Positions 1,770 to 58,624 of a DNA stretch of 64,000 bases are shown piece by piece (the stretch's first letter is position 1; every line of letters begins with the position of its first letter). Source of the stretch: Octopus sinensis (taxonomy: Eukaryota); the NCBI RefSeq assembly GCF_006345805.1, contig NC_042998.1, positions 80,786,001-80,850,000 of the forward strand. Direction: 5' to 3'. The notes under the pieces are model-generated. The model saw only the letters and a list, made by a program, of their open reading frames with translations, was not told the DNA's origin and searched no databases. A program made the translations under genes and the position numbers.

Positions 1770-13404
<11,635 letters not shown>

Positions 13405-13708
13405 TTTTTCCAAAATATGATGATTTTGTTTCTATAAATAATGAAAATTACTTCAACGTTTCCTGTTATTTTTCTATTTAATATTTCATTTCACTTTTTA
13501 CTCTTGGCTTCATTTCGAAAATATCCTATTTACAATTTGCATATTACGGCAAGTTTTTTTTCAGAAAAGTATTTTCAAATTTTAGTAATACAGTGTATAT
13601 GAAAGGTATATGGTAATAGAGCAGAAATTGCCATTATATAGTATAATAGCTAGTCTACACATTTTAACTATATTTCACCTATATTTAAATAGTACTTTAT
13701 ATATATAT

Positions 13709-13800
13709 ATTAATGGCTGATGAGTGCTCAGCATTCTAAAACTGTTGTAATGCTTACAACATTTAATAAAATGATGTAGTGCGAAACGATCGTACCAAAT
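13709..13800 (+). ncRNA. Type I hammerhead ribozyme candidate with intact core, 3' of gene A
   Basis: ATT(AA)TGG-CTGATGA-GTGCT...AGTGC-GAAA-CGATCG-TA-CCAAAT. Inner helix II includes CAGCATT/AATGATG and a perfect TGTTGTAA-tgc-TTACAACA hairpin; predicted cleavage after GUA (13794). Confidence 0.75.
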
Positions 13801-13829
13801 TACCAAAGTTATTCTTGTTGCTTATTTTG

Positions 13830-13885
<56 letters not shown>

Positions 13886-13886
13886 T

Positions 13887-14157
13887 GGCGATCCACTTCG
13901 GTCATGACTGACCATGGGATTGCACCTACGAAGTTACCCTCCCAGGCACAAGTCCGGGCAAGGTCGTTTATGGAAGACCAGCAGTCGCCCATGCATACCG
14001 GCCTTCCCTCTCCAGCCCACCAGTGTTATCCAAGAGAAAGGCAAAGGCCGATACAGCTTGGTACCTGTGACGTCGCACAACTCGCAGCCCGGTCCGGGAT
14101 TCGAACTCACAACCTCACGATCGTAAGCTCGACTCTCTAACCACTGAGCCATGCGCC
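13887..14157 (-). mobile_element. tRNA-derived SINE family D inserted in (TA)n
   Basis: Minus head GGCGCATGGCTCAGTGG (A-box) ... GTTCGAATCCC (B-box), then a non-tRNA body and tail; TA repeats on both sides. Confidence 0.85.
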
Positions 14158-14209
14158 GTCACTATATATATATATCAAAATTAGGCATAGTTAGTAAAAT
14201 GTTATTGCC

Positions 14210-14318
14210 ATCGTCATCGTCATCGTCATCGTCATCTTTTTCTTCTTCTTCTTCTTCTTCTTCTTCTTCTTCTTCTTCTTCTTCTTCTTCTCTTCTTCTT
14301 CTTCTTCTTCTTCTTCTC
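14210..14318. repeat. (TCA/TCG)n plus (TTC)n trinucleotide microsatellite
   Basis: Direct reading of the sequence. Confidence 0.95.
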
Positions 14319-17189
14319 CTTATTGTTATGAAAAAACTAAAATATATAAAAAAAACAACTAAAGTATATAAACGTCACTGAACTGACGCATTTAATAGTA
14401 AATAGCTTTGTATTATGGGGAAAATGCATCACTCATCCAACGAAGACCACAGTTCAACAATAATTTGATGTATAAAAATGTAGGATAAGCAATAGAATGA
14501 GCCAAACAAGGTTGGTTTTAAGTGCATCAAGGAATCAACTCACACCTCATGAATTACTGAACATGATCATTCTTGTTTAATTTCTTCGGCAAACACTAAC
14601 ATCAGCTTACCACATATATTTGTATTTCATTGGTTCTGGTAAATTTTTCCTTAGATTTTGAGTCTTGTTTAAAATGCTCTGCTTGTTGTCCCTGAAATGA
14701 TAGAGAAAAAAATTTTAATGGTTGTAACGAAACTAAACTTGTATACTCATATTACTGTCAGAAAAAATATAGTAACGTCGGGGAAGAAGTAAGTATCTTG
14801 CCTGATCATCATTGTTTTCAGATGTGTTGTCATCCAAATCCTTTTTCTGAATTTGTGTGATAGTTACTCAGGTATTTCTCTTCAAAAGGTAAACTCATAA
14901 ATCTTCCATTTTTCATTAATATTCTTAGGTTAGGCCTATCGACCTTTCTTGCTGTCAATTTTTCTCGACTTCGAGCGAGAAATTTTCCACAGATATTTGA
15001 AACAGTCACCTAAATTATCTAAACCTCTCATATCTTTTTATCATATGGATTACTGGGAAGCAAGATATTTCTCTGGTGTTACAAGGAGGGAACTCATGAA
15101 GTTATGCACTCCACCACCACCGGAATCTCTTCTTTCTGGCCATTCCTTTCTCCTCAATGACTTTTTCCCTTTAGTTTGACTGCCCCTTAATCACACACGA
15201 AGATGGAAATATACTGTAATTGCTTTGTTATCCGAACAATATACACTACCTTTTCAAAGCAACACAAAGCGCCATATTTAAAATCAGCATCTTAAAAGTA
15301 GTTTAAAACAACCTTCAAAAAGGCGTAACCATCTGACCACAAATTGCAGTGAGGGATGGAGATGACTATGAGCATAGGCGGAGAATACAATGAAAGAATA
15401 TGATATTTAAGTTTAAGATTATTTATATAGAAATAAACAATAGCATTGATGATATGAGGGGTCCTTGAAATGTTAAAAGTAAAGAAGCCGAGAGTGGTAT
15501 GTAGGACAACTGGATGTGTTTGTCTTATCAATTCTGAGAATATTTCCACTGCTTTCTGTCAGTAAGTATGCCTAATTAATATTCCCACAGAATAAATCTG
15601 CATAATGGGCTATATTGTAGATAATTGATGCAAACATCAAAACAATAGAGAATAGAAAAAGAAAAGGCAGATTGTATGTTAGAAGAAAATATGTTTTATA
15701 GCTTCTAAAATTTTCCTTTAAAATTTAATTTAAAATTGGTTGAACAATGGAATCATTCTTAAGCATCTTCATTATATTAAAAGCAAAGCAAAACAAAACA
15801 AAACAACAACAAAAAACAATCAATATACCTGCAATTACTAAATAATTTTGTGTTCTCAGAAATTCTTCTCTATTTTAATGAGAAATGCTGGTTCTACTTC
15901 TACCATTAACGCCTGTGTAGACGCTCGGGCATTCATCCGTCTCGTGATAGATGCAAGGTCCTATTCGGAAGGTCTGTTGTTCTTATACAGGTGAAAGAGA
16001 AAATATCTTCGAATTTCTCCTTTGGAATTTCTCTATTCATTTTAGAGAATTTATTCTTACCCGCAAGAATTATAAGTTGTTGATGTTATGAGAATTTTAT
16101 AAGTTGATGTTATGAGAATTTTATAAGAGAGAACGCAAAATAATTCTCTCTTTTTTTTGGGAACGGTAGATCTCGAAGTAGATAAAGCTATAAATAATGG
16201 CGTTTAAATATATTTTAACTCCATATTTACACGCTATTAATTATAACTATATCTGTTTCGAGATTCATAATTCTAAAATAGAATTATAAGTTTAGTTAAT
16301 TGCTCATTAAAATTTTACGGTTAAAGAATATACAGCTGAAACTCTGAATGAAAACACATTGTTTGAAAAAGAGAACTCCTTTCTATAATCTTTTTGTGAA
16401 TTGCATTATAAACATACCCCCACACACTAAAAAAAAATCTATGTACAAAAACCTGATGTCACATAATTTAATAGTAACAATCTTTCAGTGAATTATCTGA
16501 GCTTGATGTTGAACAAGTCCCTAAACCATTAAATCAAATTTTGTTGACGTGAGACGTAAACCTTCTGTCTTTGAAATACTGAAATCATTTCAGGATTTAT
16601 TTAATACATGATTTATCTGGTAGAAGACCATTTCGGCAAGACATGAGATAGGAAATGAGAAAAAGCATTCAACTTTGAACCATAAGTTCGGATATCTTAC
16701 AATAATGCTATTATTTACCCACATGACTTTATAACACGGTTTTTGCATTGTTTTGGTTTCAGTATCATATTATAATACGGGAAGGTCTTCAACTAACCTA
16801 GGATCCATCACCTGATCTATGTCAATAATAAAGGGAATTAATCGGTGAATTGTCACACTCGTTAAAGCATTGGCTAGAATGCCTTAGGCTCTGAGTTCAA
16901 ACACTGCCCCTCATGCTTTCGGTGTCGATATAAAAAGACGGGGGATTGGAGAAACAGTTAGAGGTTCGAGAGAGATGTCTTACATTATCTGTTCCGCGTC
17001 TGCGTTTTAACAGCACTGGTGTCAAGATGTATCTGCCCAAGTTGGCAGCTTGGACATCGGAGAAATATCAGTGGGAGAAAGAAGAATTGCAGTTACGGTA
17101 AACTACCAGTTTACTTTTAAAGTGTTGTTCAGACATGCACATACATGTTCAGATGAATAGTCAGCCTTCAACGGCGAATGATCTGTATT

Positions 17190-24960: not shown

Positions 24961-25454
24961 AACAGAAACAAACTCGCTTATACACCAAATGGGCCAACAT
25001 TTGGGACAAAGGCACATGCAGGAGTGGTGATGTGAAACACCCCAGACTGAGGAAATTAGAAAGACCACGGTGGTGTTCCAACATGATCGCAGCCGCATGG
25101 CCGAAACGAGTAAAAGAGTAATATATATATATATATATATACATAGAAGTAAATATATGGCACAACGAAGTACCGATATTTACTGGAAATAGCGAACGTA
25201 ATAATACGACGCTAATGTATAGCTTCACCGCGTATGTACTAGCAAAAATGCGTGAGTGCAACAAACTTGAAAAACATACCTCCAGGGAGAACATTTGAAA
25301 GATGAAATACCTAGAAAAGGATAATGTGGGACCGGAGCCGGTTTCAGATTTTTCGAGATATGCCTGTACACATATACTTGATCTATCTTCATCAGCCAAA
25401 CATATACCACGACAACATTTCAGATGTTACCACATTAATACCAATACACTCGAC

Positions 25455-28849: not shown

Positions 28850-29376
28850 GAACATGTGGTGATGCTCTACATCTGGTAAAATTATGAGGGAATGATTCGA
28901 TACGAGTTCGTTCCGGACGGTCGTACCATGGATGCCAACCTGCAATCCAAACAACGGATGTTGGACATTTTGCGGAAAAAGATATCCGGTATTCGTTAAC
29001 AGAAAATGAGCTCTTCTGCAGCAAGACAAAACAAGTCCACATACCGCTTGAGCGACCTGGAATAAACTACAGAAACTTGGTGGAATTGAACTAATACTAC
29101 ACCCAGCATTTAGTCCGAACCTAGCTCCCTCGGATTATTGCTTGTTCTGATCCATGGCTCACTTCCTGAGCTCGCGACACTTCATCAACCAAAAGGATGT
29201 GGAAGCTTCATTTAAGGAGTTCTTTGCCTCGAAGGGAATCAAAACATCGGCAGAAAGGTGGTTTCAGACTGTGTAATACGATGGCATCTACTTTGAGCGC
29301 TAGGATGGTTTTGTTGTCATTTGATGAATAAAACAAATAAGTTACTAAAATATAAAACTTTTGACTCAACACTATA
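28850..29376 (+). mobile_element. mariner (DD34D) transposase 3' half with TIR
   Basis: VMLYIW...LLQQD...PHTA...HPAFSPNLAPSDY.LF.SMAHFL...YDGIYFE; TIR AAAACTTTTGACTCAACACTATA at ~29354-29376. Confidence 0.85.
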
Positions 29377-29477
29377 TAATATAAAGCGACCCCCATAAGC
29401 AATAAATACACGTATTTTTCAAGATATAGAATGACTCCTATGTTGAGCTGAACAAAAACATAAAATATGGCATACTT

Positions 29478-32262
29478 TCTAATACTTGGTTCTACGCTCC
29501 ATTGAGACGTGGTGCCTCTCTACGATTCCGTTACCGCTCGGCCTATACGCTGCTCTGAACAAGCGACACACTTTCCACCGGTCAAGCATATCCCTCAACG
29601 CTTCCGAACGAAATGCCGCCCCGTTGTCCATTAGCTGTTCTTCCACGGGACCCCTCTCTAAAAATATCCCGTTCAAAATTTGCGCAATTTCGTCAGCAAT
29701 GCCTGTCCTCTACTCCCTCCAAATGGCCAGCCGGTCAGGCCTGCAGTCGACCATGGAGAGATACATTCCCTGACGGTAGTGCGCCACATCTAGCCTCAGA
29801 TAGCCTCTTCCAGTTGTGCTCCACCGAAAGGTTTCCTTGCTCATGCCCACACGGAGTAGGGTCAATGGACTGACACCTGTCGCAGCTCCCGACCACTTTC
29901 CGGATGCTTCTCCTATTGACATCAGCATCAATCATCTTCACGAGATACAGGGTCCTGTCCTCACCCAAGTGATGCATAACGTGCAGTCTCTTCAGTTCAT
30001 CCAACCGACACGCCGCAGCTATCCCTTTCTGTGCTTCTCCACGCCCTTTAGAGCAGCTCCCCCTTCCATAGAGTCCGGTGGCTTCGCAATCAGTCCGAAC
30101 TTCTCCCGATGTCTCACTACCTCGTTGGCTGGCACTACAGTTTCGTCCACCAAAATGTCGTCTGTGTAGGAACTGGTGGCTTTTCTTATCTTGTCCTCTT
30201 TCCCTTGGACGGATTTAAGCACCGCCGCCATTATCTTCGGAGCGAAATTCAGTACGAAACCCAGCCTGGTTAAATAGTACGTCCGACCCTTGTACCGCAC
30301 CAGCTGATATCGCCTCAGTTTGTCGCTCACATGGAGCTGCAAGTATGCCGATTTCAAGTCGACAATCGCCGCTGCATTGGTCGACTGTCTCCACACACGT
30401 AACGTCTCGCCACAAACGTCCGTCGCCTCGCCTCCCGTGTGGCACGATACATGCTCGTTTAGCTCCCTAAAGTCCAGCATCGGTTTGACTTTTCCCTCGT
30501 CGGCTGCACCACCGCCATCAGAAGTAGCACTCCGCCAACTACCTCCTCCTCCCAAGGGACAAGGACCCCTTCCTCGATCCACCTCTCTACCTCGTCTTCA
30601 AACTCGACCCTGGCGTGACTTTCCAGGGTACGCTGGTAGCAGCTCACCCTGTTCTTCAGCATCGGGGGCTCGTCTTTCCATTGCCACTCTATCGTCCACC
30701 TCTGACCATCGAACGCCGCCTGAAAATCCTTGTCCTCAATGGTGTAAGCGGCGCAGTCCCTCGCAGGGCTGTGCTTTCTCTGGCGATCCTGACTCACAGC
30801 ACACGACGCTCCCGCGCTTCCGAACGTGTGACCTCATCTCCTACAATACTGACACCACCGAGGCGTCATCACCACATCAACCCCGTCTATCAGGCGTTCA
30901 ACCACAATTACCTGCAACCTTAGCGCCTCGTACCACTATCTCTACATTGCTGCTGTGTTTGCATCAGATTTCGCTGCCGTTGACCGCCCTGACGTTACTT
31001 GCTCCATTCCATTTCTTCGTCACCTTTGAAGTCACGAGGGTGGTCGTGCAACTTGTATCCACTAGGGCCTCGACATCAATTAAGGGCAGCGTCTCCAAAA
31101 GCGCCTCTGCTCATTTGCGGGGAAAGTTCGAGAGGCAGCAACTTCCCCACGGTCGTTTTCCTGGACGCAATCACGAGCGATGTGCCCTGTCTGCCTGCAT
31201 CGATAGCAGACGGGCCCCGGTTGCGTACACTCCCTCGCCATGTGCGACCCTGACATTTAAATCACCGGCCTGACAACGGCCGCTGTCGTTGCACGGTAGG
31301 CTTCTTCGCGTCTTTCTCCGGCCGTCGGCCGCCTTTATGCGCCTCCGTTACCGCCATCGCTATCGCCTTCCGTCCAGTGTTTCGCGTCAACACGCGGGCT
31401 TGAGTCACAAGTTCACACAGTGTCATCTTTTTGCCCCCGGGCAATTGCTGCAGTCGAATCCCTACGTCGTCAGGGAACCCACTTACGAACGCCAGTCGCG
31501 CTGCTCTGTCCAGGCCTTCTCCTGTAAACCCAGCCAGCGTGGCTAGCCCACGCACCTCCGCCGCGTATTCATCCACCTGCTCTCCCGTCCATCTAATCGT
31601 GCCCAGCTTAACAAAGGCTGTATATTCACATTCGGTGTAAGCTTCTCTCAGACGTTGCTCAATCTTCTCCTCACTCAGACGTTCTTCTTCATCCATCTCG
31701 AGGTATAGAGTCAACGTGCTCCCTTCCAAATATAGCGCCATAAGGCTCGCCACGTCGCTAATGCCTTGCAATCTCGCCACAAGCCTGATTTTACGCATCC
31801 AGGTCACTATATCGCCCTCACCATTAAAGGGTCTGATAACGTCGCTGGCGATCCTGATTTTAGCTGCCATCGTAGTGACGTCTTATGTGGAGCGCCGAAG
31901 TAGCTTGTGGTGTATGCGGGAGATTTGAAGTAAAGACACCTACCTTCTCTTCGTCGACGCAGACCTCTCTGGCGGTAACGCACACTTCCACGTGGCCCGA
32001 CCCGAACGCTAAAAATTGCAGCTGCTTTTCCCTTACCTTGTCGAAGCGCTCACTCGTCCAACACTGTCGGTTACTCCAATCGAAAAGGCCTAATTGTCCC
32101 CTGCCTGCGCGCGCGTCACTCCTGCGCCCTTCCTCTTCCGGTCAGCCCCAAGTTCCGGTCAGATCCTCAGCTGCTGACGTCATCCCACATCAGCTTGTGG
32201 TCCTTCGCAAAGGATCAGAATTTCTGTAGTAACTCGGGAGGAAAGGGTATTTGTACTCCATC
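29478..32262 (-). mobile_element. Ty3/gypsy LTR retrotransposon remnant: 5' LTR, gag, protease, partial RT, integrase; RNase H region and 3' LTR missing
   Basis: Gag 31262-31870 (FNGEGDIVTWMRKIRLVARLQ...). Protease ALVDTSCT near 31040-31070. RT with VKPMLDFRELN, IVDLKSAYLQLHV and YTDDILV. Integrase zinc finger HVMHH...CDRC and core DVAHY...MDNG...GNGIVERHH. Many frameshifts. Confidence 0.92.
31886..32262 (-). repeat. 5' LTR of the gypsy element (~375 bp)
   Basis: Inverted termini TGTGGAG (31886) and CTCCA (32256-32260); GC-rich; perfect TGACGTCA at 32175-32182; ends 15 nt before the gag ATG. Confidence 0.65.
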
Positions 32263-43398: not shown

Positions 43399-46300
43399 TT
43401 ATGTATATATATATATACTTTACAAGATAAGGAGAAGAAGAAAAATTCTAATGCCAAATATGCCGAAACAAAAACATTTTTTTGTCGATAACCATTATAA
43501 TTTATACGTCTCGAAACAAACCGATAGAAATATCTAAAAAATTCGTTATTACCGTATTGGTCCAATTTCGGGGTTAATTCATGAGAAATTTTCCCCTCTT
43601 CAGCGGCAAATACGCGAGATATAAATGAAATACTTACTCAAACCCATGGAAAAAGCAAGCACTAAGTCCTGAGCAGACTTAAGTACCCCAAATATATCCA
43701 AAATAGAAAAATCTTCGGCGCACCTCGAGACACATGTGATTCGAACTAGAAACTTTCACAGAGTGATAGAATCCGGAAGGGAACACTAATCTATTTATAA
43801 TTAATATAGGATAAAATGTTTTTCGGGAAAAAAATTTTATCAACTCAAGGAAGGTAAAAGCTCATCGATTCTGTCCCAACACGCCGAACAGGAACACGCG
43901 GGATCAATCAATAACATAGAAATTAAAATATTGTCCACACATAGAACAGATGCAACAATTAGACAAATTACAGAAGCTACACACATAATAGAAAAGAAAC
44001 CTAGCCTGAATAGAAAACTAGAATGGAGCACTAGCACACACCACAACATATGACGATAGAGGATCCCGAAAACATAATAAATACACAGATAAATAAACAA
44101 ATAGAAATAAATAACTATATATATATATTTTTTTTTCGATTCGATTTATTATTATTATTACTAGTATTGTTGTTATATATACAAGCATATGTAATGATAA
44201 TAATAAGTGGATGTAAACACATGAACAAACTAAGAATAAACAAAAACAACAACAACAAAAACAAAATACAAATTACATGAACATATATAAATAGAAGATA
44301 CAAATATTACAGGCATCCTCCCCACATACACACACTAAATAAACATAGACGCGCATAGAGATATAAGCATGCGCAAATGAAAACATACAATAGAAATACA
44401 AAATGGCTGACAGTTAGTAAGGAGAGACACAAATAAGAAAGAAGAAAACAAAGGACCACTGATGCGGTCACAGGAGTGTGACGAAAGAATTCTGGCCGAA
44501 ATAAGATTAAGATTAATGTAAAAAATAAATAACACTGAAGCTAAATAACACCAAATATATAGTGCGTGTGTTTTTATTGGTTAAACTGGCAATATGACCA
44601 TTCCGAAATATAGCAATATATATATATATTTATAAATAACCAATAGAGTCGACTAACACTGTCAACTGCCACTGACAGTTCATAGATTTCTTTATTTAAA
44701 TCCTTTAGTCCTCTTCTTAGTCACGTGTAGGTGTTCAAGATCCTCCCACATCAACAGTCCTCTCAGCTGTAAATGGGTAAGCGTAGGATGTACTGGCATC
44801 CCGTCGAGGAGGACTCACCTGTGAGGTGACGTCATTCGAAAGCTACAACAATGCCAGGAAGCGCATTGTGAATAACAGTGTATAACAACATCCATTAGTG
44901 TGGTCGATGCAGAAAACGAGTCGTTCGGTATCTTCTCCTACCAACTTTAAAATCACCAAACGAAAGTGGATATTTCTCTATGTTATCAATCTATTCATCA
45001 ATAAGAAAAACAGCTGTTGTGAACCTCTAAAATCCATTCGCATTATTATTTGAAACACGATTACATGTATAAGTAAATACCTATTACTTAAATAAGTTTT
45101 CTTTTTATTCAGTCCAAGACGTTGCAGTTCTGGAATTAACGCGTCCTGCACCGCTCGGTAGATGTATTTCTACAATTACTCTCCCCAATAAAGGAGACAC
45201 CTTTTCAGGACCCTGTACAGCCGTTGGATGGGGTCAAACTGGAAGTAAGCATTGAACTGCATTTTTTTTAATATCTGTATTTATTTTCAACTCTGGAATA
45301 TTTATATTCTTGTTATTATAATTTTAGAAAATGTACTATCTGAAAATTCTTACAAATTTGCTTTCTGTTGGAAGATTTGCTTTTGAAGATGTAATTCTTC
45401 AGAATTTGTAATTTGATTGGTATTGATATCCGATGTTTTGTAGAAATTGTAATCTGTATGATTTTCAGTTTTATATAAATAGTGAACCTAAATTTATCGC
45501 AGTGGAATAGTAACTACCAGTTGAATATTAATATTAAATTAAAATCTGAAAGTTGCTGCACCGCGGTGTATTATAATACAGTGCAGGCCAATGGCCCAGT
45601 GGTTAGGGCAGCGAACTCGCGATCATAGGATCGCGGTTTCGATTTCCAGACGGGGTGTTGTGAGTGTTTATTGAGCGTAAACACCTAAAGCTCCACGAGG
45701 CTCTGGTATTCTTTCACCACAACGTCTTCTCACTCTTTCTTCCTGTTTCTGTTGTATCTGTATTTGAAAGGGCCAGCTTTGTCACACTCTCTGTCACGCT
45801 GAATCTCCTTGAGAACTACGTTAAGGGTACGCGTGTCTGTGGAGTGCTCAGCCACTTGCACATTAATTTCACGAGCAGGCTGTTCCGTTGATCGGATCAA
45901 CTGGAACCCTCGTCGTCATAACTGACGGAGTACCACGATTATGGTACAATATATCTACCATAACTTTCTGCAGTTCAGTAGAGGTTGTAAGTGTAGCAAT
46001 GTAGACTGTAATAAGTTAATTGTATATTACTATTTTGTTTTACAATACTGAACTATAGTTTTCGTGTTGACTATGCACAAACTGTTGCTATTTACTGTTT
46101 GGTATCTTTGTTAGAGTGAAGGCACTTGGTCTAGTAGTCAAGTGTTGCACTTACAATTTCAAGATCGTTGTGTTCTGGAGCAGAATACTTCATTACACAT
46201 TGCTCTTGTCTGCTCATCAGTAAATGAGGGGTCCTGCGATAGACTGACGTCCAGTTCAAGGGGAAACGAGGTAACTGGGCGTATTAGTCACAATACTCGA

Positions 46301-46878
46301 TACAATATTATCCAGGCCCCGATAATGATGATGATAATTTTGTTACAATGTAGTAGTCTTCTGCCAGTAGAAAAAACTCGTTTTTCTCCGGTGCATATGT
46401 CTAACTAATTGATGCATGACTGACTTTGTTTCTCTTATAATTCATTCTGGATTAGTATATATTTAATTGTCCAAAACTCTCTTTTAGCTAAAGGAATCTT
46501 CCCAGACAAGCTTCAGAAAGCTAGAATTAATGTAATTCCCACAAATAAATGTCAACAACAAGCATCTGGTATTACTGCCGAACAGCATATCTGCGTTGGA
46601 GATAACAAATTCAAGGGTAAAAACGTCTGTGGTGTAAGTAAATCTTTTTATAGTTCTAAGATAAAATAATTTCCTTTAAAGCAGTGGACATTTTTGAAAT
46701 GCTTATTTTCTGGTTTCAGGGAGATTCCGGTGGTGGTCTCGTCTGCAAAAGGAAATCCGATAATGCCTACGTCGTTGCTGGTATTGCTTCCTATGTTTTC
46801 GACTGCGACAAAGGATTTGGAGTCTATGCCAATGTGGCCAATTTCCTTGACTATATCACGGGATACATGAGCTTGTAG
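36036..46878 (+). CDS. Gene B: secreted chymotrypsin-fold serine protease (peptidase S1A), 255 aa; exons 36036-36096, 38057-38204, 42353-42474, 45113-45244, 46488-46633, 46720-46878
   Basis: All introns GT-AG, phases 1,2,1,1,0; 768 nt CDS. Signal peptide [18 protein letters not shown], then DPVEH-IVSG...TAAHC...LQDVAVLEL...AVGWG...KNVCG/GDSGGGL...YITGYMSL-stop. Confidence 0.95.
36125..37960 (-). mobile_element. Old RTE-clade LINE remnant filling gene B intron 1, interrupted by a SINE
   Basis: Minus fragments [51 protein letters not shown] and KQLQERYLA...[13 protein letters not shown]; many stops. Confidence 0.7.
36945..37350 (+). mobile_element. SINE family A dimer
   Basis: Head GGCGGCGAGATGGCAGAAGCGTTAGC plus two units. 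Confidence 0.88.
38057..38204 (+). CDS. Gene B exon 2
   Basis: tttcag|TG GAG CAC ATT GTT AGT GGA ... GCC CAT TGT CT|gtaagt. Confidence 0.95.
38837..38923 (-). ncRNA. Hammerhead-like motif in the left arm (C3U)
   Basis: Minus ATTTC-TTGATGA-TCGGG...CTCCA-GAAA-CGGCCG-TC-GAAAT. Confidence 0.55.
39137..39223 (+). ncRNA. Hammerhead-like motif in the right arm (core intact)
   Basis: ATTTC-CTGAAGA-AGGGG...CTCCA-GAAA-CGGCCG-TT-GAAAT. Confidence 0.6.
39570..40262. repeat. ~690 bp compound (TA)/(CA)/(CATA) microsatellite
   Basis: Direct reading of the sequence. Confidence 0.95.
42353..42474 (+). CDS. Gene B exon 3
   Basis: tcctag|T GAT GGT GAA GTA ... ACC CTT C|gtgagt; contains QWIPHPQY. Confidence 0.92.
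43085..43340 (-). mobile_element. Isolated fragment with two C2H2-like fingers, probably the 3' end of an RTE-type LINE ORF2
   Basis: [19 protein letters not shown] and [21 protein letters not shown]; no TGEKP linker, no splice sites; bounded by (TA)n and (CA)n. Confidence 0.55.
43549..43609 (-). ncRNA. Fully canonical type I hammerhead ribozyme candidate
   Basis: Minus TTGCCG-CTGAAGA-GGGG-(19 nt)-CCCC-GAAA-TTG-GAC-CAA-TA-CGGTAA; all core nucleotides present, three paired helices, AUA site. Confidence 0.8.
45113..45244 (+). CDS. Gene B exon 4 (Asp102)
   Basis: attcag|TC CAA GAC GTT GCA GTT CTG GAA ... ACT GGA A|gtaagc. Confidence 0.95.
45582..45939 (+). mobile_element. SINE family B, full length
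   Basis: Head TGGCCCAGTGGTTAGGGCAGCG...GGTTTCGATTTCC and the same tail as 7499-7878. Confidence 0.88.
46112..46300 (+). mobile_element. Degenerate tRNA-derived SINE
   Basis: GAAGGCACTTGGTCTAGTAGTCAAG head, CORE-like CTTCATTACACATTGCTC and CCTGCGATAGACTGACGTCC. Confidence 0.55.
46488..46633 (+). CDS. Gene B exon 5
   Basis: ttttag|CT AAA GGA ATC TTC CCA GAC AAG CTT CAG AAA ... GTC TGT GGT|gtaagt. Confidence 0.95.
46720..46878 (+). CDS. Gene B exon 6 (Ser195 to stop)
   Basis: tttcag|GGA GAT TCC GGT GGT GGT CTC ... AGC TTG TAG. Confidence 0.96.
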   Translation, partial: GDSGGGLVCKRKSDNAYVVAGIASYVFDCDKGFGVYANVANFLDYITGYMSL

Positions 46879-46937
46879 ATATTTTTGAGAATATATCGAT
46901 GATTATATGAGTTGGTGTTGGAAACTAGTGAAGACAA

Positions 46938-46943
46938 AATAAA
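46938..46943 (+). terminator. Probable poly(A) signal of gene B
   Basis: AATAAA 60 nt after the stop codon, followed by T-rich sequence. Confidence 0.6.
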
Positions 46944-47966
46944 TTATATAAAAAATTATCACGTTTCTTAATTCTTTTATATTCAATGCGTTATTCAGGT
47001 TTTACTTGACTTAACAACTGGTAAGATTAGATGATTTAAATGACTGACAACAGCAGAAATGAGTGTATTGGAAGAATAAGAGGTTGGAATTGAAGATTAT
47101 TTATAAAGAAAAAATATAAAACTAGAATTGAGGCAGTGACAGAGGTATGCTGCAGATACTAAGGAATGTTAGAATTGCTTGTAAAGTAGATGAAGATACA
47201 TTTCGCATCAATTCTGAGAATATTTCCACTGCATGTTTTTCAGTACCAATTGCCAGTTACTGTTCCTAAGAATAATAGTGTGGAATGAGCAGGATTGCAA
47301 ATGCATGATACACATATCACTGCGCAGGAAAAGGAAATGAAAGAGACTGGGCTGTATATTATGGGAAAGCGATAAATACTCTACGTATGTTGGAGTTATA
47401 TTAGAAGAAAAATGTGCGATATATTAATTACCAGTATCATTCTTAAATGCCTTAATTGTTCTGATAACAAAATGTTAATTCTTCTCTACGTGGTCAGCAA
47501 TGATAAGGGAGACAATCCTTTCTAGATTAAGTGAAAATGAGATGGGTTTTGAAGGCGTGCAAAATGTACACATTTGATATTACTTTTTCTTACACGTTAT
47601 ACAGATTTAAATATTTGAAGATGTTGATAACCATTCTTCTTTACCTTGATGAGAAATCCTGTTTCCATCTCTACAAACAACTTCATTGACGACAGTAGTA
47701 GAGTCACTCAGAATACAATAGGTACGCGGCTCACATCCAGTCAGAAGGTCTCTTGTTCTTTTACAAGCGAACGAGCTAGACTATATTTGCTCGCTTCATC
47801 TCATTTAAATACCAATTAAATATCCCTGAAGTCACATATTTAGAACAATACATTGAACAGTCTCGTTGCTGATATATATCCGATGGAATGGTTAGAAACC
47901 CTTTCATCATAGATCCACAGACACGGGATTGACATGGAGGTAAATAAAAGCAACCACAACAGTAAT

Positions 47967-53732: not shown

Positions 53733-56680
53733 TTAAACAGGTTCTTTCACTCGCAACATACTTGCTATAGACTTCCATCTTTTACGAAACACACTTTGCG
53801 ACAGGCATTTCTTCTCCAGCCTTATTTTCCGTTTCATGTGGAAAACGAAAAAGTCGATTAGCTCGAGACTGGAGATAAACATGCCTGTTGCAATTCCTTT
53901 TACTCTCGTCTTCCACACTACTTCTTTGGCCATAGCAACTACCGAAAGAAAACAGGCTCGCTCCTCCCTATTCAGGAAGGTCGGCGGAACTATCTTCATT
54001 ACAGATTCGCTCGACAGTTGTACTCTTCTCGAATGCGACAGCAGGTGTTCGACATAAGCCCAGAGTTCAGTCACCTTCGGGCATTGCACAGACCGGCGAA
54101 GGTGCACACCCATGTCTAAAGAGCTTATCTCGAACCGGTAAAGCTCCTCTGTAACATTGCCAGGCCAGGGACTTTTGGTAATTATCCATAGGCCCCGGAC
54201 CGAATGTTCTTTGGAACAGGCTGGCCAGTTGATTTTCGTCGAAGCCCAGAGTGTCTCCTAGGACGTCATCACACTTAAACTCAACTAACTCTCTATAGAA
54301 GAACGAGGTAGTAGCCCCGCCACCGGCGTTGCCCGACTGGGAGAGAAGCACGAGTGCCTGATAGCACTCTGCATGCCACATGCCCAACCTCGGTCTACAC
54401 TTGATCCATGGGTTCAGTTCGTTAAACGATGTGAACTGTGGAAATAACAGCTTGACAAGCGGAGACCACACCTGCTCACCGTCCAGGTAAATCCAGAGGT
54501 GCCTAAGCCTGAGCGCATGTCTGCGCATTTTTAGCCACGGCATCCCTAACCCACCGTTCAGCGGCTTTTGGCAGCAAATAGAGCGCCTTACAAGAGGTCT
54601 GCTGCCCCTCCACAAAAAGTGAAAGAGCATGCGTTCCAGTTTGTTCAGCCACGAATCGGGGCAAGGCACTACGGTTAGGCGGTAAGTGATTACAGAGGCG
54701 ATAAACACTTCTGCAACCTCCGCTCTCCCTTTCAAGGACAGCTTCCGCTCAGACCATGTCTGAGTTAGGAGAGCCTGAACGGCTCCGAAAAGAAACCATT
54801 TACTCGAACTACCGATTCTATGTAGATGTATAAAGCGATGATCCATCCGCGGAAGGTCGGGCCGAAGCCAGCCGCCGCGAGGACCGCCGCCAGATACTGA
54901 TGGTCCACCCTATCAAACGCTTTCGATTTGTCCAAGTGGACCATAGCCCCACCCTTGCCAGGAATCCTATTTACCCTTTCTAAGGCATAGCGTAGAAAGT
55001 GGAGATTGTCGTGGATGGTCCTTCCAGGGATGGCGCAAGTTTGCACCTCGCCAACAAGTTCACCCACGACCCGCGCCAACCTTTTTGCTAAGACCTTGGC
55101 CAAGATCTTCAACTCTGCGTTAAGCAGAGTGATAGGCCGGAAATTAACAATTAAATTCCCCTTGTTTGGGTCCTTTCTTAACAGCGCTACCACCCCTCGG
55201 CTCACTGACCTAGGAATTCTCCCGTTCTGCTGCCAGTTGCTGTACACGCATGCAAGTAGGTGCCCAAACAAGTCTGGCATGCTACTATAGAGTTCGTAAG
55301 GCAGACCATCGAGTCCCGGCGATTTGTCCCCGCTGCAGTCTGCCAACATATCCTCGACTTCTTTGGCTGTGATCGGCGCCTCACAAGATTCCGCGTCCGG
55401 CCCCGATAGACGCGGCGAACCGGCTAGGAAGTCTGCGAGCTTCTCCCCGCGTTCCAGCTCGCCGCTCCTCCCGAATAGCTGGGCGAAATGATCATGAAAC
55501 ACCTTTCACATCTCCTCGGGTTCGTTTACTAATCGACCATTTGGGCCCGTCAAGGATCGAATGGTTGAGTTGTTGCCACGCTGGCCCTCTACCACCCGGG
55601 CCCATCCGGCTGCGTTGATCCCTTCCTGTCTCATTGCACGGATCTTAGCCCTGACAATGCACCCTTCATGTTTAGCTTTGAGATGTTGGTCGAGTGCTAA
55701 CCTCGCCGCTAACACTTTCGATGCACTGCCTGACCTCATTGCCTCCTCTATTGCCTTAACTAGTTCCTTTTCTACTTTGTTTCTAGCACTAGCTAGTTTT
55801 TTGCTAAACCTAATTAACTCAAATTTGATGGCTCTTTTCAGGGCGTACCACCATTTGTTGTTGATAATGGATCCGGTTAACGCCCTCATTACTAATCGTT
55901 TAATCTGATTCCTGTAGGCTTCACAGTCCAATAGTGACTTGTTTAGCTTCCAGTAACCGGTACCTCGTCTACACATGCTATCTATGTCGAGCGTACAGGT
56001 CACTAATTTGTGATCGCTGTAGCTGACGATATGGTGTTGTGGACAGCTAAGTATTTTCTTATCTTTCCTTCTAGTTATGATTCTATCGATATAAGATCTG
56101 GACGACCCGTCGTTTCTTGCCCAGGTCCACGCTGGAGTGTCTGGATGGTCCAGTCTGAATCTATCTGCCAATTCGAAACGACTTAGCATATCGTTGAGGT
56201 GAGGTAATCCCCTCCTATTCTTTCTCGAGCCAACATAATCTACGCTTGCATCGCAAATTATGTTGAAGTCACGTGTTCGACGTGCCAAGAAAATTCTCTA
56301 GGCTTTTGAAATACTCTTTCTGCCCGGCTTTTCCTTTGCACGGAGTATAGACAGCGACCAGCCTGAACACTTTACCACTGCTGTGCGTCACATCCAAAAC
56401 GACCAACCTGCCTTCCGGATCTATAAAGACAGTTCTAATCTCTAAATCCAGGTTTTTCCTGACCAGCACTGCCACTCCTCCTCCCCCTCCAGGTCGACAG
56501 GGAGAAACGTATTTCTCGTAGCCGTTTAGAAGAGGCATAAAGGCCTGCAGCCCACTCAGTCTTGATTCGGTAATTACCACTACATCCAAACGATGCGACC
56601 TAAGGTCGTTAAGGAGGTAGCCTTGCTTCCAATACGACCCCAGGCCGCGAATATTTATACAACCGAGTTTAAACGAGAAT
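53733..56680 (-). pseudogene. Tx1 ORF2 (APE endonuclease plus reverse transcriptase), frameshifted and deleted
   Basis: Four consecutive ORF pieces; the QGCPLSP/YADD part of RT is absent at the junction near 54800-54850. Confidence 0.85.
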
Positions 56681-56738
56681 GTGAAAAATTAGTCGAAAGT
56701 TTAAAACTTACTGTTTTAACGGAAGAGAGGGTGTAGTT

Positions 56739-58330
56739 TCACCCTCCTCTTTTCTGTCTGTGAGTGTTGTGTTTTGCGAGGTCAGTTTTTTTTGCGAATT
56801 GCCTGTACAGATGGCTTGAAAAGTTCATCTGTAACGGGCCTACGTCCTCGGCAAAAGTTTTTTTAATTTCAAAATAATCAGCGTTATCTATTGTATAAAA
56901 TTCTACATTTTCAGAAATAATACTATTTATATCTGTTACGATATATTTTTTCGCCGATTTCATTAAGATAATTTTTTCTCTTAATGGGTTATTGTTTTTA
57001 TTTATCGCTGTGAAGGTGTTTCTTTTTTTTTGTTCGGTGATTATGGAGTGGTGGTGTGTGTGTGTGTGTGTGTTTGTGGGTGTGTGTGTGCTTGTAGAAG
57101 CGTGGGTGTTTGTAGGTGTGTGCGTGCTTGTGGTAGGTGTGTGTGTGTTTGTGTGTGCTTTTTCCAGTGTGTGTGTTTTTTTGGCTACGTGTGTGTTTGC
57201 GACTGTATTTGTGGGTGTGGGTGTGCTTGTCTGTGTCAGAGTATAGTCCTGTGTATCCGAAGAGGGTGGATTTTTCCGTTTCTGTCTTCTTTTTGAAGGT
57301 TCTATGGTGACCCACTCCTGGATGTTGTTGTTGTTGTTGTCATCATTGTTGTCGTTTTCTGCCGTTGTCGGCTGAATTTCGGCAATTGGGGTGCGTGACG
57401 TGGCTGCTATTTCTAGCGGTGAAGTTGTTTTCGGCGTCGTGCTTGCCTCTGCAGTATTTTCTTTGGCTGTCTTCTTGCAGCTCGACTTTATGTGGCCTTT
57501 CCGACACATTTATAACACCTAGGTTTTCTTCCCTCGACTATTACCATCAAGCTGGTATTATCTCCAATAGTGAGGGAGCTTGGCAATTTTTCCAAGTCCG
57601 AGGGGTTCGCTTGGATCACAAGTTCTAAGTCTTGTCCATACCAGGTCGTTGGGCGATATCTTTTAGACTGAAGAATGGCAATTTCTTCCTCTTTGCCTAA
57701 GAGAATCGCTGCTATTATAAAGTCCACCTCGATTTCGGGCGGAATGTCCGTGACCGTTATCCTGGAAGTTCTCATCCCTAAATAAAATGGTAGAAGAACT
57801 ACTTCGTCTGACTTCAACGTTCTTGTTGAATGTTCCCTAGCTATTTCTTCGCTTGGGAAACGCACCTCTACCGTTCCGAAGCGACTACCCCTTGTTATAT
57901 ACGTAGTTTGTTGCCATATCGGCCTCAAACATTTTTCAATGGCTTCTCTCTGCACGAAGTCAATTTTCTTATTTTTCACATTATATGTCTTGTATATGAC
58001 AGTTTTTCTCTCCGTCGCGTAAATTAATTCACTGGGAGGGAACAACTTCACATTATCACCTTCTTTTTTTAGTAGTCCTTGGTATTTCTTTAATTCTTCC
58101 TTGTTAATGACTATATTTTCACAGGGGCGAGTTGCTGCACTCGCAAAATTTATTTTTGACTTTTCTTGTTGTGTAGTAGCTTCGCCAGACATATTGTCGT
58201 CTGCTTTTGTAACGAGCGCGTGAGACATCTCTTTACTTTTACCTTCCTCCTCCCACATTTTCGCCTTCATGCCTTCAAACAAATTTTCAACGTTTTCCTC
58301 CGACTCGGAGGAGATTGGTGGCAAATTCAT
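56739..58330 (-). pseudogene. Tx1 ORF1 (nucleic-acid-binding protein), frameshifted near 57505
   Basis: ATG at 58330 (MNLPPISSE...); the CCHC knuckle is split between ORFs 57488-58672 and 56739-57509. Confidence 0.8.
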
Positions 58331-58487
58331 GTTTTTCGTCGCTTCCCCCTTGAAACAAGGGGGAAAGAACAGCAAAACTCTGCTGCAACAGCAGAAAAGA
58401 AGTGGCCTCGACGACCAAAACAGCAAATTTTCAAACTTTTCAGCACAAAAACAATCTTTCACTGCGGAGCAAAGAATAACACGACCG

Positions 58488-58490
<3 letters not shown>

Positions 58491-58569
<79 letters not shown>

Positions 58570-58624
58570 TGGAGAGATAGAGAGAGAGAGAGAGAGAGTG
58601 AGAGTGAGAGAGAGAGAGAGAGAG
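58491..58624. repeat. (GA)n microsatellite at the Tx1 5' junction
   Basis: Direct reading; a matching (GA)n tract lies at ~53445-53511. Confidence 0.97.

What the first reader, a model, noticed from the sequence alone, without database searches (positions are those of the whole stretch)
13709..13800. Intact sense-strand hammerhead just 3' of gene A that contains the gene's first canonical AATAAA
Seen: a complete core, bulged helix I, long structured helix II, palindromic ACGATCGT and a GUA site at 13794, about 310-390 nt after the stop. The first AATAAA downstream of the stop (13765-13770) is inside helix II, 24 nt before the predicted self-cleavage site. The unit is ~120 bp between (TA)n tracts, and gene B has no equivalent. 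Established: 3' UTR hammerheads (rodent Clec2) lower expression, and downstream cleavage aids Pol II termination. Inference: a TE-derived ribozyme may end, destabilise or compete with polyadenylation of gene A mRNA, giving paralog-specific control. Caveat: a variant signal TATAAA at 13433-13438 may end the mRNA earlier.
Basis: partly seen in the sequence, partly recalled or inferred. Interest (0 to 1): 0.8.

Follow-up and report, generated by a model that had tools for sequence, protein, structure and literature searches.

The report
Transposon-type hammerhead relic downstream of octopus protease gene
A hammerhead-ribozyme motif with a complete catalytic core does sit about 300 bases after an octopus salivary-type serine protease gene, but it looks like a solitary leftover of a mobile element lying beyond the gene's likely mRNA end, so it is an ordinary genomic feature rather than a demonstrated gene switch.

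Summary
The window is Octopus sinensis chromosome DNA, 100% identical to L002. Gene A and gene B are tandem S1-peptidase paralogs.

**Observation: confirmed at the stated coordinates.** The motif has:
- CUGAUGA at 13717-13723 and GAAA at 13783-13786.
- A 59-nt helix II closed by a G-C pair.
- The palindrome ACGAUCGU, with a GUA site at 13794.
- A bulged helix I.
- AATAAA at 13765-13770, and (TA)n on both sides.

**Not chance.** A relaxed type-I descriptor finds 3 motifs in the window against 0.055 expected. One of the others belongs to a ~330-bp repeat that ends in (TA)n. That repeat has an inverted truncated copy next to its member on another chromosome. This insertion style is typical of Penelope-like elements (PLEs).

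**Interpretation: poorly supported.**
- Five related genes carry AATAAA 37-60 nt after the stop codon. Gene A has TATAAA at the homologous spot, so its mRNA probably ends near 13455-13470.
- The hammerhead lies inside a ~1.86-kb gene-A-specific block of repeats and insertions.
- It is a single copy with a 2-bp helix III, a form that normally needs a partner copy.
- Its active fold is about 9 kcal/mol worse than the minimum-free-energy (MFE) fold.
- No Rfam hammerhead model matches it.
- No family members of this particular motif were found.

**Verdict:** a new member of a known kind, of low interest. Regulation of gene A is untested and unlikely.

The parts
13246..13404 (+). Last coding exon of gene A (an S1 peptidase containing GDSGG); stop codon TAA at 13402-13404
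   Evidence: P0001, Octopus vulgaris/sinensis S1 type peptidase, 98% identity to the exon composite; the gene range ends at window position 13404.
13433..13438 (+). TATAAA, the variant hexamer at the position homologous to the AATAAA poly(A) signal of the related genes. The probable mRNA 3' end lies about 15-30 nt downstream and is followed by the U-rich stretch CGTTTCCTGTTATTTTTC.
   Evidence: Alignments; five related genes have AATAAA 37-60 nt after the stop codon, while gene A has TATAAA at +29. The location of the mRNA end is inferred, not measured.
13513..15370 (.). Gene-A-specific block of about 1.86 kb between two stretches of 3'-flank homology shared with gene B and O. bimaculoides. 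It contains the hammerhead unit, (TA)n tracts, a SINE-like element and a (TCN)n microsatellite.
   Evidence: A 13391-13512 aligns to B 46865-47012 and to L003 22990-23117; homology resumes at A 15391-15903 = B 47069-47674 = L003 23272-23348.
13698..13709 (.). Left (TA)6 tract that abuts the hammerhead unit
13710..13716 (+). Helix I, 5' strand (UUAAUGG)
13717..13723 (+). Catalytic core C3-A9 (CUGAUGA)
13724..13782 (+). Helix II, 59 nt. It has a 5-bp base that includes G10.1-C11.1, internal loops and an inner 8-bp hairpin (13743-13761). It contains AATAAA at 13765-13770.
   Evidence: this segment folds alone at -11.3 kcal/mol..
13783..13786 (+). Core G12 A13 A14 plus A15.1 (GAAA)
13786..13793 (+). 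Helix III, the palindrome ACGAUCGU. As a monomer it gives 2 bp plus a GAUC tetraloop. Between two copies it could form an 8-bp helix.
   Evidence: The architecture is as described for invertebrate type-I hammerheads (PMC4209133, PMC7229834).
13794..13794 (+). A17 of the GUA triplet; predicted self-cleavage on its 3' side (between 13794 and 13795)
   Evidence: Cleavage was not tested.
13795..13802 (+). Helix I, 3' strand (CCAAAUUA, with an AA bulge)
13803..13831 (+). Short tail of the unit, running up to the right-hand (TA)n tract
   Evidence: With 13795-13802, it leaves about 36 nt after the cleavage site. That length resembles the 30-40-bp 'tail' of PLE insertions (PMC8557442, PMC11167929), but this is a resemblance only.
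13832..13884 (.). Right (TA)n tract
13887..14160 (-). GC-rich SINE-like insert with a tRNA-like head carrying A-box and B-box motifs (GGCTCAGTGGTTAGAG ... GAGTTCGAATCC on the minus strand). It is not part of the hammerhead unit.
   Evidence: Read directly. The same 'MAQWL...' head translation appears in repeats at 7508 and 45591. ARAGORN and Rfam do not call a tRNA here.
25121..25452 (-). Second hammerhead-bearing element (c2), about 330 bp, with (TA)n at both ends. Its hammerhead spans 25407-25325: CUGAUGA starts at 25395, there is a stable helix III (ACCG/GCUC/CGGU), and the GUC cleavage site is at 25330.
   Evidence: 81% identical to L005 23501-23834 on another O. vulgaris chromosome, where an inverted truncated copy lies next to it at L005 23398-23254.
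43548..43611 (-). Third hammerhead-like motif (c3): CUGAAGA core, GGGG/CCCC helix II, 4-bp helix III and 6-bp helix I. It lies antisense in an intron of gene B.
   Evidence: hammerhead fold -13.4 against MFE -14.4 kcal/mol. It is conserved in O. vulgaris (L006 17491-17443).

Best explanation
The feature is a solitary type-I hammerhead motif of the minimal, palindromic-helix-III kind. Penelope-like retroelements (PLEs) and their non-autonomous derivatives (non-LTR retrozymes) carry such motifs.

**Origin (inferred).** A short copy of about 120 bp was integrated into a (TA)n microsatellite. The site lies in the intergenic DNA just downstream of gene A, in the Octopus vulgaris/sinensis lineage. 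The copy is one of several insertions that now make up a ~1.86-kb gene-A-specific block.

**Original role (established for this class, inferred for this copy).** In the parent element such motifs act in pairs. Two neighbouring copies form an extended helix III through the palindrome and cut multimeric element transcripts into unit lengths.

**Present state (inferred).** Here there is only one copy. It has a 2-bp helix III, a weak helix I and a strongly competing alternative fold. It is therefore expected to cleave poorly or not at all.

**Relation to gene A (inferred).** The motif lies beyond the conserved polyadenylation site of gene A, so it is most likely absent from the mature mRNA and neutral for the gene.

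**Shown:** the presence and anatomy of the motif; the enrichment of such motifs in octopus DNA; the insertion block; the conserved position of the poly(A) hexamer.

**Inferred:** descent from a mobile element; weak activity; no role in gene A expression.
For: - **Complete core and helices at the stated coordinates**.
- **Enrichment.** There are 3 descriptor hits in the window against 0.055 expected. In about 200 kb of sampled octopus DNA there are 5 distinct hits.
- **Mobile-element behaviour of a neighbour.** One neighbour, c2, is a member of a dispersed ~330-bp repeat. The repeat ends in (TA)n and has an adjacent inverted truncated copy. PLE-type insertions are described with (TA)n targets and inverted 5'-truncated copies in PMC8557442.
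- **Shared helix III style.** The L005 copy of the c2 repeat has a palindromic, loop-less helix III (ACCGGU), like the ACGAUCGU here.
- **Literature match.** Metazoan and invertebrate type-I hammerheads have a 1-2-bp helix III capped by a 2-4-nt palindromic loop. They are conserved at G10.1-C11.1 and work as dimers (PMC4209133; PMC7229834).
- **(TA)n on both sides** occurs for only about 2% of placements in the window.
- **Lineage-specific block.** The motif sits in a block absent from gene B and from O. bimaculoides.
- **Conserved poly(A) position.** The related genes have AATAAA 37-60 nt after the stop, and gene A has TATAAA at the homologous position.
- **Unfavourable fold.** The hammerhead fold is -11.5 kcal/mol against an MFE of -20.3.
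Against: - **No second copy of this unit was found.** It is absent from the rest of the window, from six octopus loci and from a metagenome pattern scan, which gave only chance bacterial matches. Membership of a repeat family is therefore not shown.
- **No clear homology to c2.** The unit does not align convincingly to the c2 repeat outside the core.
- **No Rfam match.** No Rfam hammerhead model matches it. However, the same models also miss a textbook minimal hammerhead in O. bimaculoides.
- **Atypical helix II.** Its 59 nt is much longer than the 4-8 bp described for these families.
- **No PLE reading frame** lies nearby.
- **No transcript evidence.** The poly(A) site is inferred from comparison only. 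The hexamer in gene A is a weakened variant, so some read-through into the motif is possible.
- **Conservation is uninformative.** O. sinensis and O. vulgaris show no differences from 13074 to 13832, but equally long difference-free runs occur in introns.
Confidence: 0.68

Rival explanations
1. Chance motif. In this view, the A/T-rich, repeat-rich DNA happens to contain CUGAUGA and GAAA with enough flanking complementarity to be drawn as a hammerhead. It has no ribozyme ancestry or activity.
For: - There are no family members and no Rfam hit.
- The hammerhead fold is 9 kcal/mol above the MFE, and the whole-segment fold z-score is only -1.5.
- Helix I has 3 bp followed by A-U pairs next to a (TA)n tract. 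Helix III is only 2 bp as a monomer.
- In a 2.7-Gb genome a relaxed descriptor would produce chance hits. An expectation of 0.055 per 64 kb means thousands genome-wide.
Against: - Three hits in one window against 0.055 expected.
- One hit is demonstrably part of a dispersed element.
- The specific combination seen here gave 0 hits in 4000 simulated windows. That combination is G10.1-C11.1, at least 5 bp in helix II, a perfect 8-nt palindrome exactly spanning 15.1-16.1, H17, and helix I (the descriptor was built afterwards, so this is an upper-bound argument).
- (TA)n lies on both sides, which holds for about 2% of placements.
- These unrequired hallmarks are the ones Cervera and de la Pena list as arguing against a random origin (PMC4209133).
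Confidence: 0.14
2. Co-opted 3'-end element. Gene A's ancestral AAUAAA has decayed to UAUAAA, so a share of transcripts reads through. The hammerhead then either cuts these transcripts, leaving unadenylated and unstable ends and giving an entry point for termination, or competes with the AAUAAA embedded in its helix II. Either route would give paralog-specific control of a salivary-gland protease.
For: - The motif is on the sense strand, only 306-396 nt after the stop.
- Gene A alone among six related genes lacks a canonical hexamer at the conserved site.
- The next AATAAA lies 24 nt before the predicted cleavage site.
- Sequence is perfectly conserved between O. sinensis and O. vulgaris from 13074 to 13832.
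- There is a precedent: hammerheads in the 3' UTRs of mammalian Clec2 genes, for which a role in poly(A) site control has been suggested (PMC6155905).
- Two other S1-peptidase genes also have a hammerhead-like motif within 2 kb downstream.
Against: - The conservation is uninformative, because 687-889-nt difference-free runs occur in introns.
- The motif is absent from gene B and from O. bimaculoides, so there is no long-term retention.
- A lone minimal motif of this class shows little or no cleavage in vitro as a single unit (PMC4209133).
- The active fold is strongly disfavoured.
- UAUAAA is, by general knowledge of animal poly(A) signals, a usable variant. The downstream U-rich element is retained.
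- AATAAA in a 25%-GC stretch is expected by chance.
- One of the other two motifs near genes is antisense.
Confidence: 0.07
3. Active solo ribozyme of a still-mobile, non-autonomous element. In this view, the unit is a live copy of a small retrozyme-like element. That element has its own transcription and forms circular or linear processed RNAs, independently of gene A.
For: - The core is intact.
- The flanking (TA)n is typical of PLE targets.
- Non-LTR retrozymes are AT-rich, short and widely expressed in molluscs (PMC7229834).
- The copy is identical in two sister species.
Against: - Retrozymes are described as tandem repeats of about 170-400 bp. Here there is one 120-bp unit with no partner.
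- No other copies appear in about 200 kb sampled.
- The active fold is poor.
Confidence: 0.08

Closest known systems
Minimal and palindromic-helix-III type-I hammerheads of Penelope-like elements (Cervera and de la Pena 2014, PMC4209133)
   Same: Both are type-I motifs with the full CUGAUGA...GAAA core and a G10.1-C11.1 pair. Both have a larger-than-canonical helix II, a short and poorly defined helix I, and a tiny palindromic helix III that implies action as a dimer. Both are associated with (TA)n insertion sites.
   Different: No PLE reading frame or pseudo-LTR lies nearby. Helix II here is 59 nt with internal loops, against 6-8 bp in that family. There is no unpaired nucleotide between A9 and 10.1. 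No sister copies were found.
Non-LTR retrozymes of invertebrates, with type-I hammerheads in ~170-400-bp AT-rich tandem repeats (Cervera and de la Pena 2020, PMC7229834; Li et al. 2026 bioRxiv 10.64898/2026.07.22.740005)
   Same: Helix III is a 2-bp stem with a tetraloop, as described for invertebrate motifs. The GC content is low and the unit is small. A derivation from PLE ends has been proposed.
   Different: This is a single 120-bp unit, not a tandem array. It lacks the canonical 6-bp helix I and 4-bp helix II, and the loop-loop contacts. Expression as circular RNA is unknown.
Discontinuous hammerhead in the 3' UTR of rodent Clec2 genes (Martick et al. 2008, cited in PMC6155905)
   Same: Both are sense-strand hammerheads downstream of a stop codon, and in both cases a link to polyadenylation has been proposed.
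   Different: The Clec2 motif is type III, split over hundreds of nucleotides, and conserved across several mammals. It lies inside the known 3' UTR and cleaves efficiently. The octopus motif is type I and minimal, is lineage-specific, and probably lies beyond the poly(A) site.
Newt satellite 2 and Schistosoma Sm-alpha hammerheads (Rfam Hammerhead_1, RF00163)
   Same: [quoted passage not shown]
   Different: The octopus motif is not recognised by the Rfam model at E<=10. Its helix II is far longer, and there is no tandem context.

Membership tests
Hammerhead ribozyme (any type) | Conserved core: C3 U4 G5 A6 N7 G8 A9, G12 A13 A14, the A15.1-U16.1 pair, and H17 not G | tested here: met
   CUGAUGA 13717-13723, GAAA 13783-13786, U 13793 and A 13794.
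Hammerhead ribozyme (any type) | Three helices around the core that form as the preferred fold | tested here: inconclusive
   All three helices can be drawn. However, the constrained hammerhead fold is -11.5 kcal/mol against an MFE of -20.3, and the MFE pairs core nucleotides.
Hammerhead ribozyme (any type) | Site-specific self-cleavage 3' of H17 | not testable with these tools
   This needs in vitro transcription and cleavage of 13700-13810, as monomer and as dimer, against a core mutant.
Rfam Hammerhead_1 / Hammerhead_3 / HH9 / HH10 / Hammerhead_II | Score at or above the family gathering threshold | tested here: not met
   There was no hit at gathering score in the window and none at E<=10 in 13600-13900. 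The models also miss c2, c3 and the O. bimaculoides minimal motif, so they are insensitive to this class.
PLE-type or metazoan type-I hammerhead | Helix III of 1-2 bp with a small palindromic loop (palindromic 15.x-16.x), allowing a dimeric active form | tested here: met
   ACGAUCGU at 13786-13793. The criterion comes from PMC4209133.
PLE-type or metazoan type-I hammerhead | G10.1-C11.1 closing pair of helix II | tested here: met
   G 13724 pairs with C 13782.
PLE-type or metazoan type-I hammerhead | Unpaired nucleotide between A9 and 10.1 | tested here: not met
   Helix II starts directly after A9 (bulge offset 0). The O. bimaculoides motif in L012 does have this unpaired nucleotide.
PLE-type or metazoan type-I hammerhead | Many related copies per genome that show covariation in the helices | tested here: inconclusive
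   No relative was found in about 200 kb of octopus DNA, and the whole genome could not be searched. A different hammerhead repeat (c2) does have a second copy.
PLE-type or metazoan type-I hammerhead | Location in a PLE pseudo-LTR, or in a tandem or solo derivative, inserted at a microsatellite | tested here: inconclusive
   (TA)n lies on both sides. No reverse transcriptase or GIY-YIG reading frame and no pseudo-LTR lies nearby.
Non-LTR retrozyme | Tandem repeats of about 170-400 bp, each with a type-I hammerhead | tested here: not met
   This is a single 120-bp unit, with no direct repeat of it in 13000-15500 or anywhere in the window.
3'-UTR regulatory hammerhead (Clec2-like) | Lies within the mature mRNA 3' UTR | tested here: inconclusive
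   Comparison places the conserved poly(A) hexamer at 13433, which is 280 nt upstream of the motif. No transcript data were available.
3'-UTR regulatory hammerhead (Clec2-like) | Conserved at the orthologous position across species | tested here: not met
   The motif is present in O. vulgaris, a sister species at about 99% identity. It is absent from the O. bimaculoides relative and from paralog B.

The most novel reading that the evidence does not exclude
Gene A has lost its canonical AAUAAA, which is now UAUAAA. In this reading it relies partly on a captured mobile-element module, a hammerhead with an AAUAAA buried in helix II, as a back-up or decoy 3'-end site. Folding of the ribozyme hides the hexamer and cuts the read-through RNA, while the alternative fold exposes the hexamer for polyadenylation. 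That would make it a natural ribozyme/poly(A) switch tuning one member of a tandem pair of octopus salivary-gland (venom-type) proteases.
Probability: 0.05. Interest if true: 0.7.

Novelty: new member of a known kind. Interest (0 to 1): 0.22.

Why it matters
**If the main reading is right**, this is one more example of the very common transposon-borne hammerheads of invertebrate genomes. Its practical value is modest:
- It shows that octopus genomes carry several minimal hammerhead variants that the Rfam models miss. All four tested here were missed.
- At least one of these belongs to a dispersed ~330-bp (TA)n-targeting element.
- It gives a worked example of why a ribozyme motif next to a gene should be checked against the gene family's conserved poly(A) site before a regulatory role is proposed.

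**Only if the unlikely co-option reading were true** would it matter more widely. It would then be a first invertebrate case of a hammerhead shaping mRNA 3' ends, and in a fast-evolving venom-gland protease paralog.

Tried and rejected
- **Rfam.** I ran gathering thresholds on the whole window and E<=10 on the motif, on c2, on c3 and on the O. bimaculoides motif. There were no hammerhead hits anywhere. The models are therefore uninformative for this class, and the result does not count against it.
- **Search for sister copies.** I used blastn-short and blastn within the window and against L001-L006, L011 and L012. Only the orthologous O. vulgaris copy turned up.
- **Metagenome pattern scan.** The pattern covered c1, c2 and L005. 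It gave four hits, all chance matches inside bacterial-looking coding DNA with no helices. No eukaryotic genome collection was available to scan.
- **MAFFT alignment of c1 with the c2 family**. It showed no convincing homology beyond the core, so I do not claim c1 is a c2 relative.
- **Sampling more octopus DNA through the window's LINE reverse transcriptase**. The hits were at most 51% identical, mostly from unnamed ENA assemblies and a cuttlefish, with none from Octopus. The element is a LINE (AP-endonuclease-like plus RT), not a PLE, so I abandoned this route.
- **O. sinensis against O. vulgaris conservation as a test of constraint**. I rejected it because divergence is too low and patchy.
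- **tRNA or SINE confirmation of 13887-14160** with ARAGORN and Rfam. Both were negative. The SINE call rests on box motifs and on the head it shares with other repeats.
- **Dimer cofold**. The predicted dimer MFE does not use the palindrome-mediated double-hammerhead arrangement.
- **PLE reading frames in the gene-A-specific block**. None were found.

Full report
**Where the window comes from.** A composite of the gene A exons matches an 'S1 type peptidase' of Octopus vulgaris/O. sinensis (P0001) at 98%.
- The locus fetched for that protein from the O. sinensis assembly GCA_006345805.1 (L002) is 100% identical to window 13000-14500.
- The O. vulgaris locus (L001) is 98.3% identical over the same stretch.
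- Gene A has its last exon at 13246-13404 and its stop at 13402-13404. Gene B has its last exon ending at 46878. They are tandem paralogs, 67% identical as proteins.
- They belong to the cephalopod salivary-gland serine protease family. The closest named relatives come from Octopus kaurna, Abdopus and Sepia.

Read directly:
- Helix I 5' strand UUAAUGG at 13710-13716 and CUGAUGA at 13717-13723.
- A 59-nt helix II at 13724-13782. Its base is G-C, U-G, G-U, C-G, U-A, and it contains an inner 8-bp hairpin.
- GAAA at 13783-13786, the palindrome ACGAUCGU at 13786-13793, and A17 at 13794.
- Helix I 3' strand CCAAAUUA at 13795-13802, with an AA bulge.
- AATAAA at 13765-13770 is the first canonical hexamer after the stop, and TATAAA lies at 13433.
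- (TA)n tracts flank the ~120-bp unit.
- Gene B has no hammerhead in its 3' flank.

**Is it more than chance?** I wrote a relaxed type-I descriptor. It requires CUGANGA, helix II of at least 4 bp, GAAA, A15.1-U16.1 plus at least one more pair, H17, and helix I of at least 3 bp.
- The window gives 3 hits. In 400 simulations that keep local dinucleotide composition the mean is 0.055, and none reached 3.
- A stricter descriptor built afterwards around this motif gave 0 hits in 4000 simulated windows. It requires G10.1-C11.1, helix II of at least 5 bp, and a perfect 6-10-nt palindrome as helix III. Being post hoc, it bounds the chance argument rather than proving anything.
- Only about 2% of placements in the window have (TA)n of at least 5 units within 60 nt on both sides.

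**The neighbours give the context.**
- Hit c2 (minus strand, CUGAUGA starting at 25395 and a GUC site at 25330) lies in a ~330-bp element bounded by (TA)n.
- That element is 81% identical to L005 23501-23834 on a different O. vulgaris chromosome. There an inverted truncated copy sits next to it, and the element again ends in (TA)n.
- (TA)n targets and adjacent inverted 5'-truncated copies are described as hallmarks of Penelope-like element insertions (PMC8557442).
- The L005 copy has a loop-less palindromic helix III (ACCGGU), the same style as the ACGAUCGU here.
- Hit c3 (minus strand, 43603-43555, in an intron of gene B) folds into the hammerhead within 1 kcal/mol of its MFE and is kept in O. 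vulgaris.
- An O. bimaculoides locus holds a textbook minimal hammerhead with the bulged nucleotide after A9 and a 6-bp GNRA-capped helix II.
- Octopus DNA thus carries hammerhead motifs at roughly 30 times the simulated expectation: 5 distinct hits in about 200 kb.
- None of the four I tested is found by the Rfam hammerhead models at E<=10. The Rfam silence therefore says little.
- The giant squid genome paper reports 235 Hammerhead_1 loci (PMC6962438). Hammerheads in cephalopods are not new.

**How it compares with described families.**
- Cervera and de la Pena describe metazoan type-I motifs with a helix III of 1-2 bp capped by a 2-4-nt palindromic loop. They note that this prevents efficient cleavage as a monomer and implies a dimeric active form.
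- They list G10.1-C11.1 and the palindromic 15.2-16.2 positions as signs of a non-random origin. They also found little or no in vitro cleavage of single minimal motifs (PMC4209133).
- Invertebrate motifs typically have a 2-bp helix III with a tetraloop (PMC7229834).
- The present motif fits these points. It departs in its very long helix II, in its lack of the bulged base after A9, and in being solitary.

**What I could not show.**
- No second copy of the 13710-13831 unit exists in the window or in eight further octopus loci.
- It does not align to the c2 family beyond the core.
- A metagenome pattern scan returned only chance bacterial matches.
- No eukaryotic genome collection was searchable, so descent from a mobile-element family is an inference from architecture and context.

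**Activity.**
- The MFE fold of the segment is not the hammerhead, and its z-score is -1.5.
- Forcing the three helices and an unpaired core costs about 9 kcal/mol: -11.5 against -20.3.
- With a 2-bp helix III, a helix I of 3 bp plus a bulge plus A-U pairs, and no tandem partner, efficient self-cleavage is not expected. This is inference, because cleavage was not tested.

**Relation to gene A.** The 3' flank of gene A aligns with those of gene B and the O. bimaculoides relative from the stop to about 13512.
- In that stretch, B and O. bimaculoides have AATAAA followed by a U/GU-rich segment. Gene A has TATAAA at the homologous position.
- Two further paralogs have AATAAA at +37. All five related genes have it 37-60 nt after the stop.
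- The family therefore has very short 3' UTRs. Gene A's mRNA most likely ends near 13455-13470, which is 250-340 nt before the motif.
- Homology between the flanks resumes at A 15391 = B 47069 = L003 23272.
- So 13513-15370 is a ~1.86-kb gene-A-specific block. It holds the hammerhead unit, (TA)n, a SINE-like insert with a tRNA-like head (13887-14160, minus strand) and a (TCN)n microsatellite.
- The O. bimaculoides protein is about equally close to A (73%) and to B (77%). The block therefore arose in the gene A lineage, either after the duplication or after the species split.
- O. sinensis and O. vulgaris show no differences from 13074 to 13832. Runs of 687-889 nt without differences also occur in introns and other non-coding DNA between these sister species, so this carries no weight.
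- The AATAAA inside helix II is expected by chance in 25%-GC sequence, since the hexamer occurs once per ~700 nt across the window.

**Verdict.** The feature is real and most likely a relic of a Penelope-like or retrozyme-type element, with confidence of about two-thirds.
- A purely chance motif remains possible, at about one in seven.
- The regulatory reading has no positive support beyond position and strand. It is contradicted by the conserved poly(A) site, by the lineage-specific insertion block and by the poor fold. I give it about 5-7%.
- The decisive tests are a whole-genome copy search, 3'-end mapping in salivary-gland RNA, and an in vitro cleavage assay of monomer against dimer.

Noticed in passing
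window 25121-25452 (minus strand); L005 23501-23834 and 23254-23398: A dispersed ~330-bp element carries a hammerhead with a stable helix III and a GUC site. It ends in (TA)n, and in L005 an inverted truncated copy lies next to it. This looks like a PLE-derived non-autonomous element of octopus.
   Followed up: partly
window 43548-43611 (minus strand); L006 17443-17491: A compact hammerhead-like motif lies antisense in an intron of gene B: CUGAAGA core, GGGG/CCCC helix II, 4-bp helix III and 6-bp helix I. Its hammerhead fold is within 1 kcal/mol of the MFE, and it is conserved in O. vulgaris.
   Followed up: partly
L012 17403-17436 (minus strand), O. bimaculoides: A textbook minimal PLE-type hammerhead with a bulged G after A9 and a 6-bp helix II capped by GAAG. 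It lies about 600 nt downstream of another S1-peptidase gene and next to an assembly gap. Rfam misses it at E<=10.
   Followed up: partly
window 13710-13802; L005 23557-23616; L012 17403-17436: Three of the five distinct hammerhead-like motifs in about 200 kb of sampled octopus DNA lie within 2 kb downstream of an S1-peptidase stop codon. Two are sense and one is antisense. Only about 7% of the sample is such sequence, giving a post-hoc binomial P of about 0.003. This could reflect (TA)n-rich gene ends or sampling bias.
   Followed up: no
window 13433-13438 against 46938-46943; L003 about 23041; L004 and L005 at +37 after the stop: Gene A is the only one of six related protease genes whose conserved poly(A) hexamer is TATAAA rather than AATAAA. 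It is also the faster-evolving paralog: 67% identity to B, while the O. bimaculoides protein is 73% and 77% identical to A and B.
   Followed up: partly
window 13887-14160 (minus strand); also about 7508-7920, 12073-12275, 45591-45982 and, inverted, 8478-8622: SINE-like repeats have a tRNA-like head (GGCTCAGTGGTTAGAG ... GAGTTCGAATCC). Several copies lie in the introns of both protease genes. ARAGORN and Rfam do not call the 13887-14160 copy as a tRNA.
   Followed up: partly
window 53733-58672 (minus strand): A frameshifted LINE with an AP-endonuclease-like part and an RVT_1 reverse transcriptase domain. Its closest database proteins are only about 50% identical (a cuttlefish and unnamed ENA assemblies).
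   Followed up: partly
window 13819-13843 against 14163-14187: The sequences just outside the two (TA)n tracts that flank the SINE-like insert are inverted repeats of each other (TTTTGAT(TA)n ... (TA)nTCAAAA). Their origin is unclear: a palindromic microsatellite or an inverted partial copy.
   Followed up: no
window 29000-32000: A GC-rich stretch of about 55%, against 36% for the whole window, has overlapping ORFs of 187-317 aa on both strands and no Pfam match. It is presumably another mobile element.
   Followed up: no
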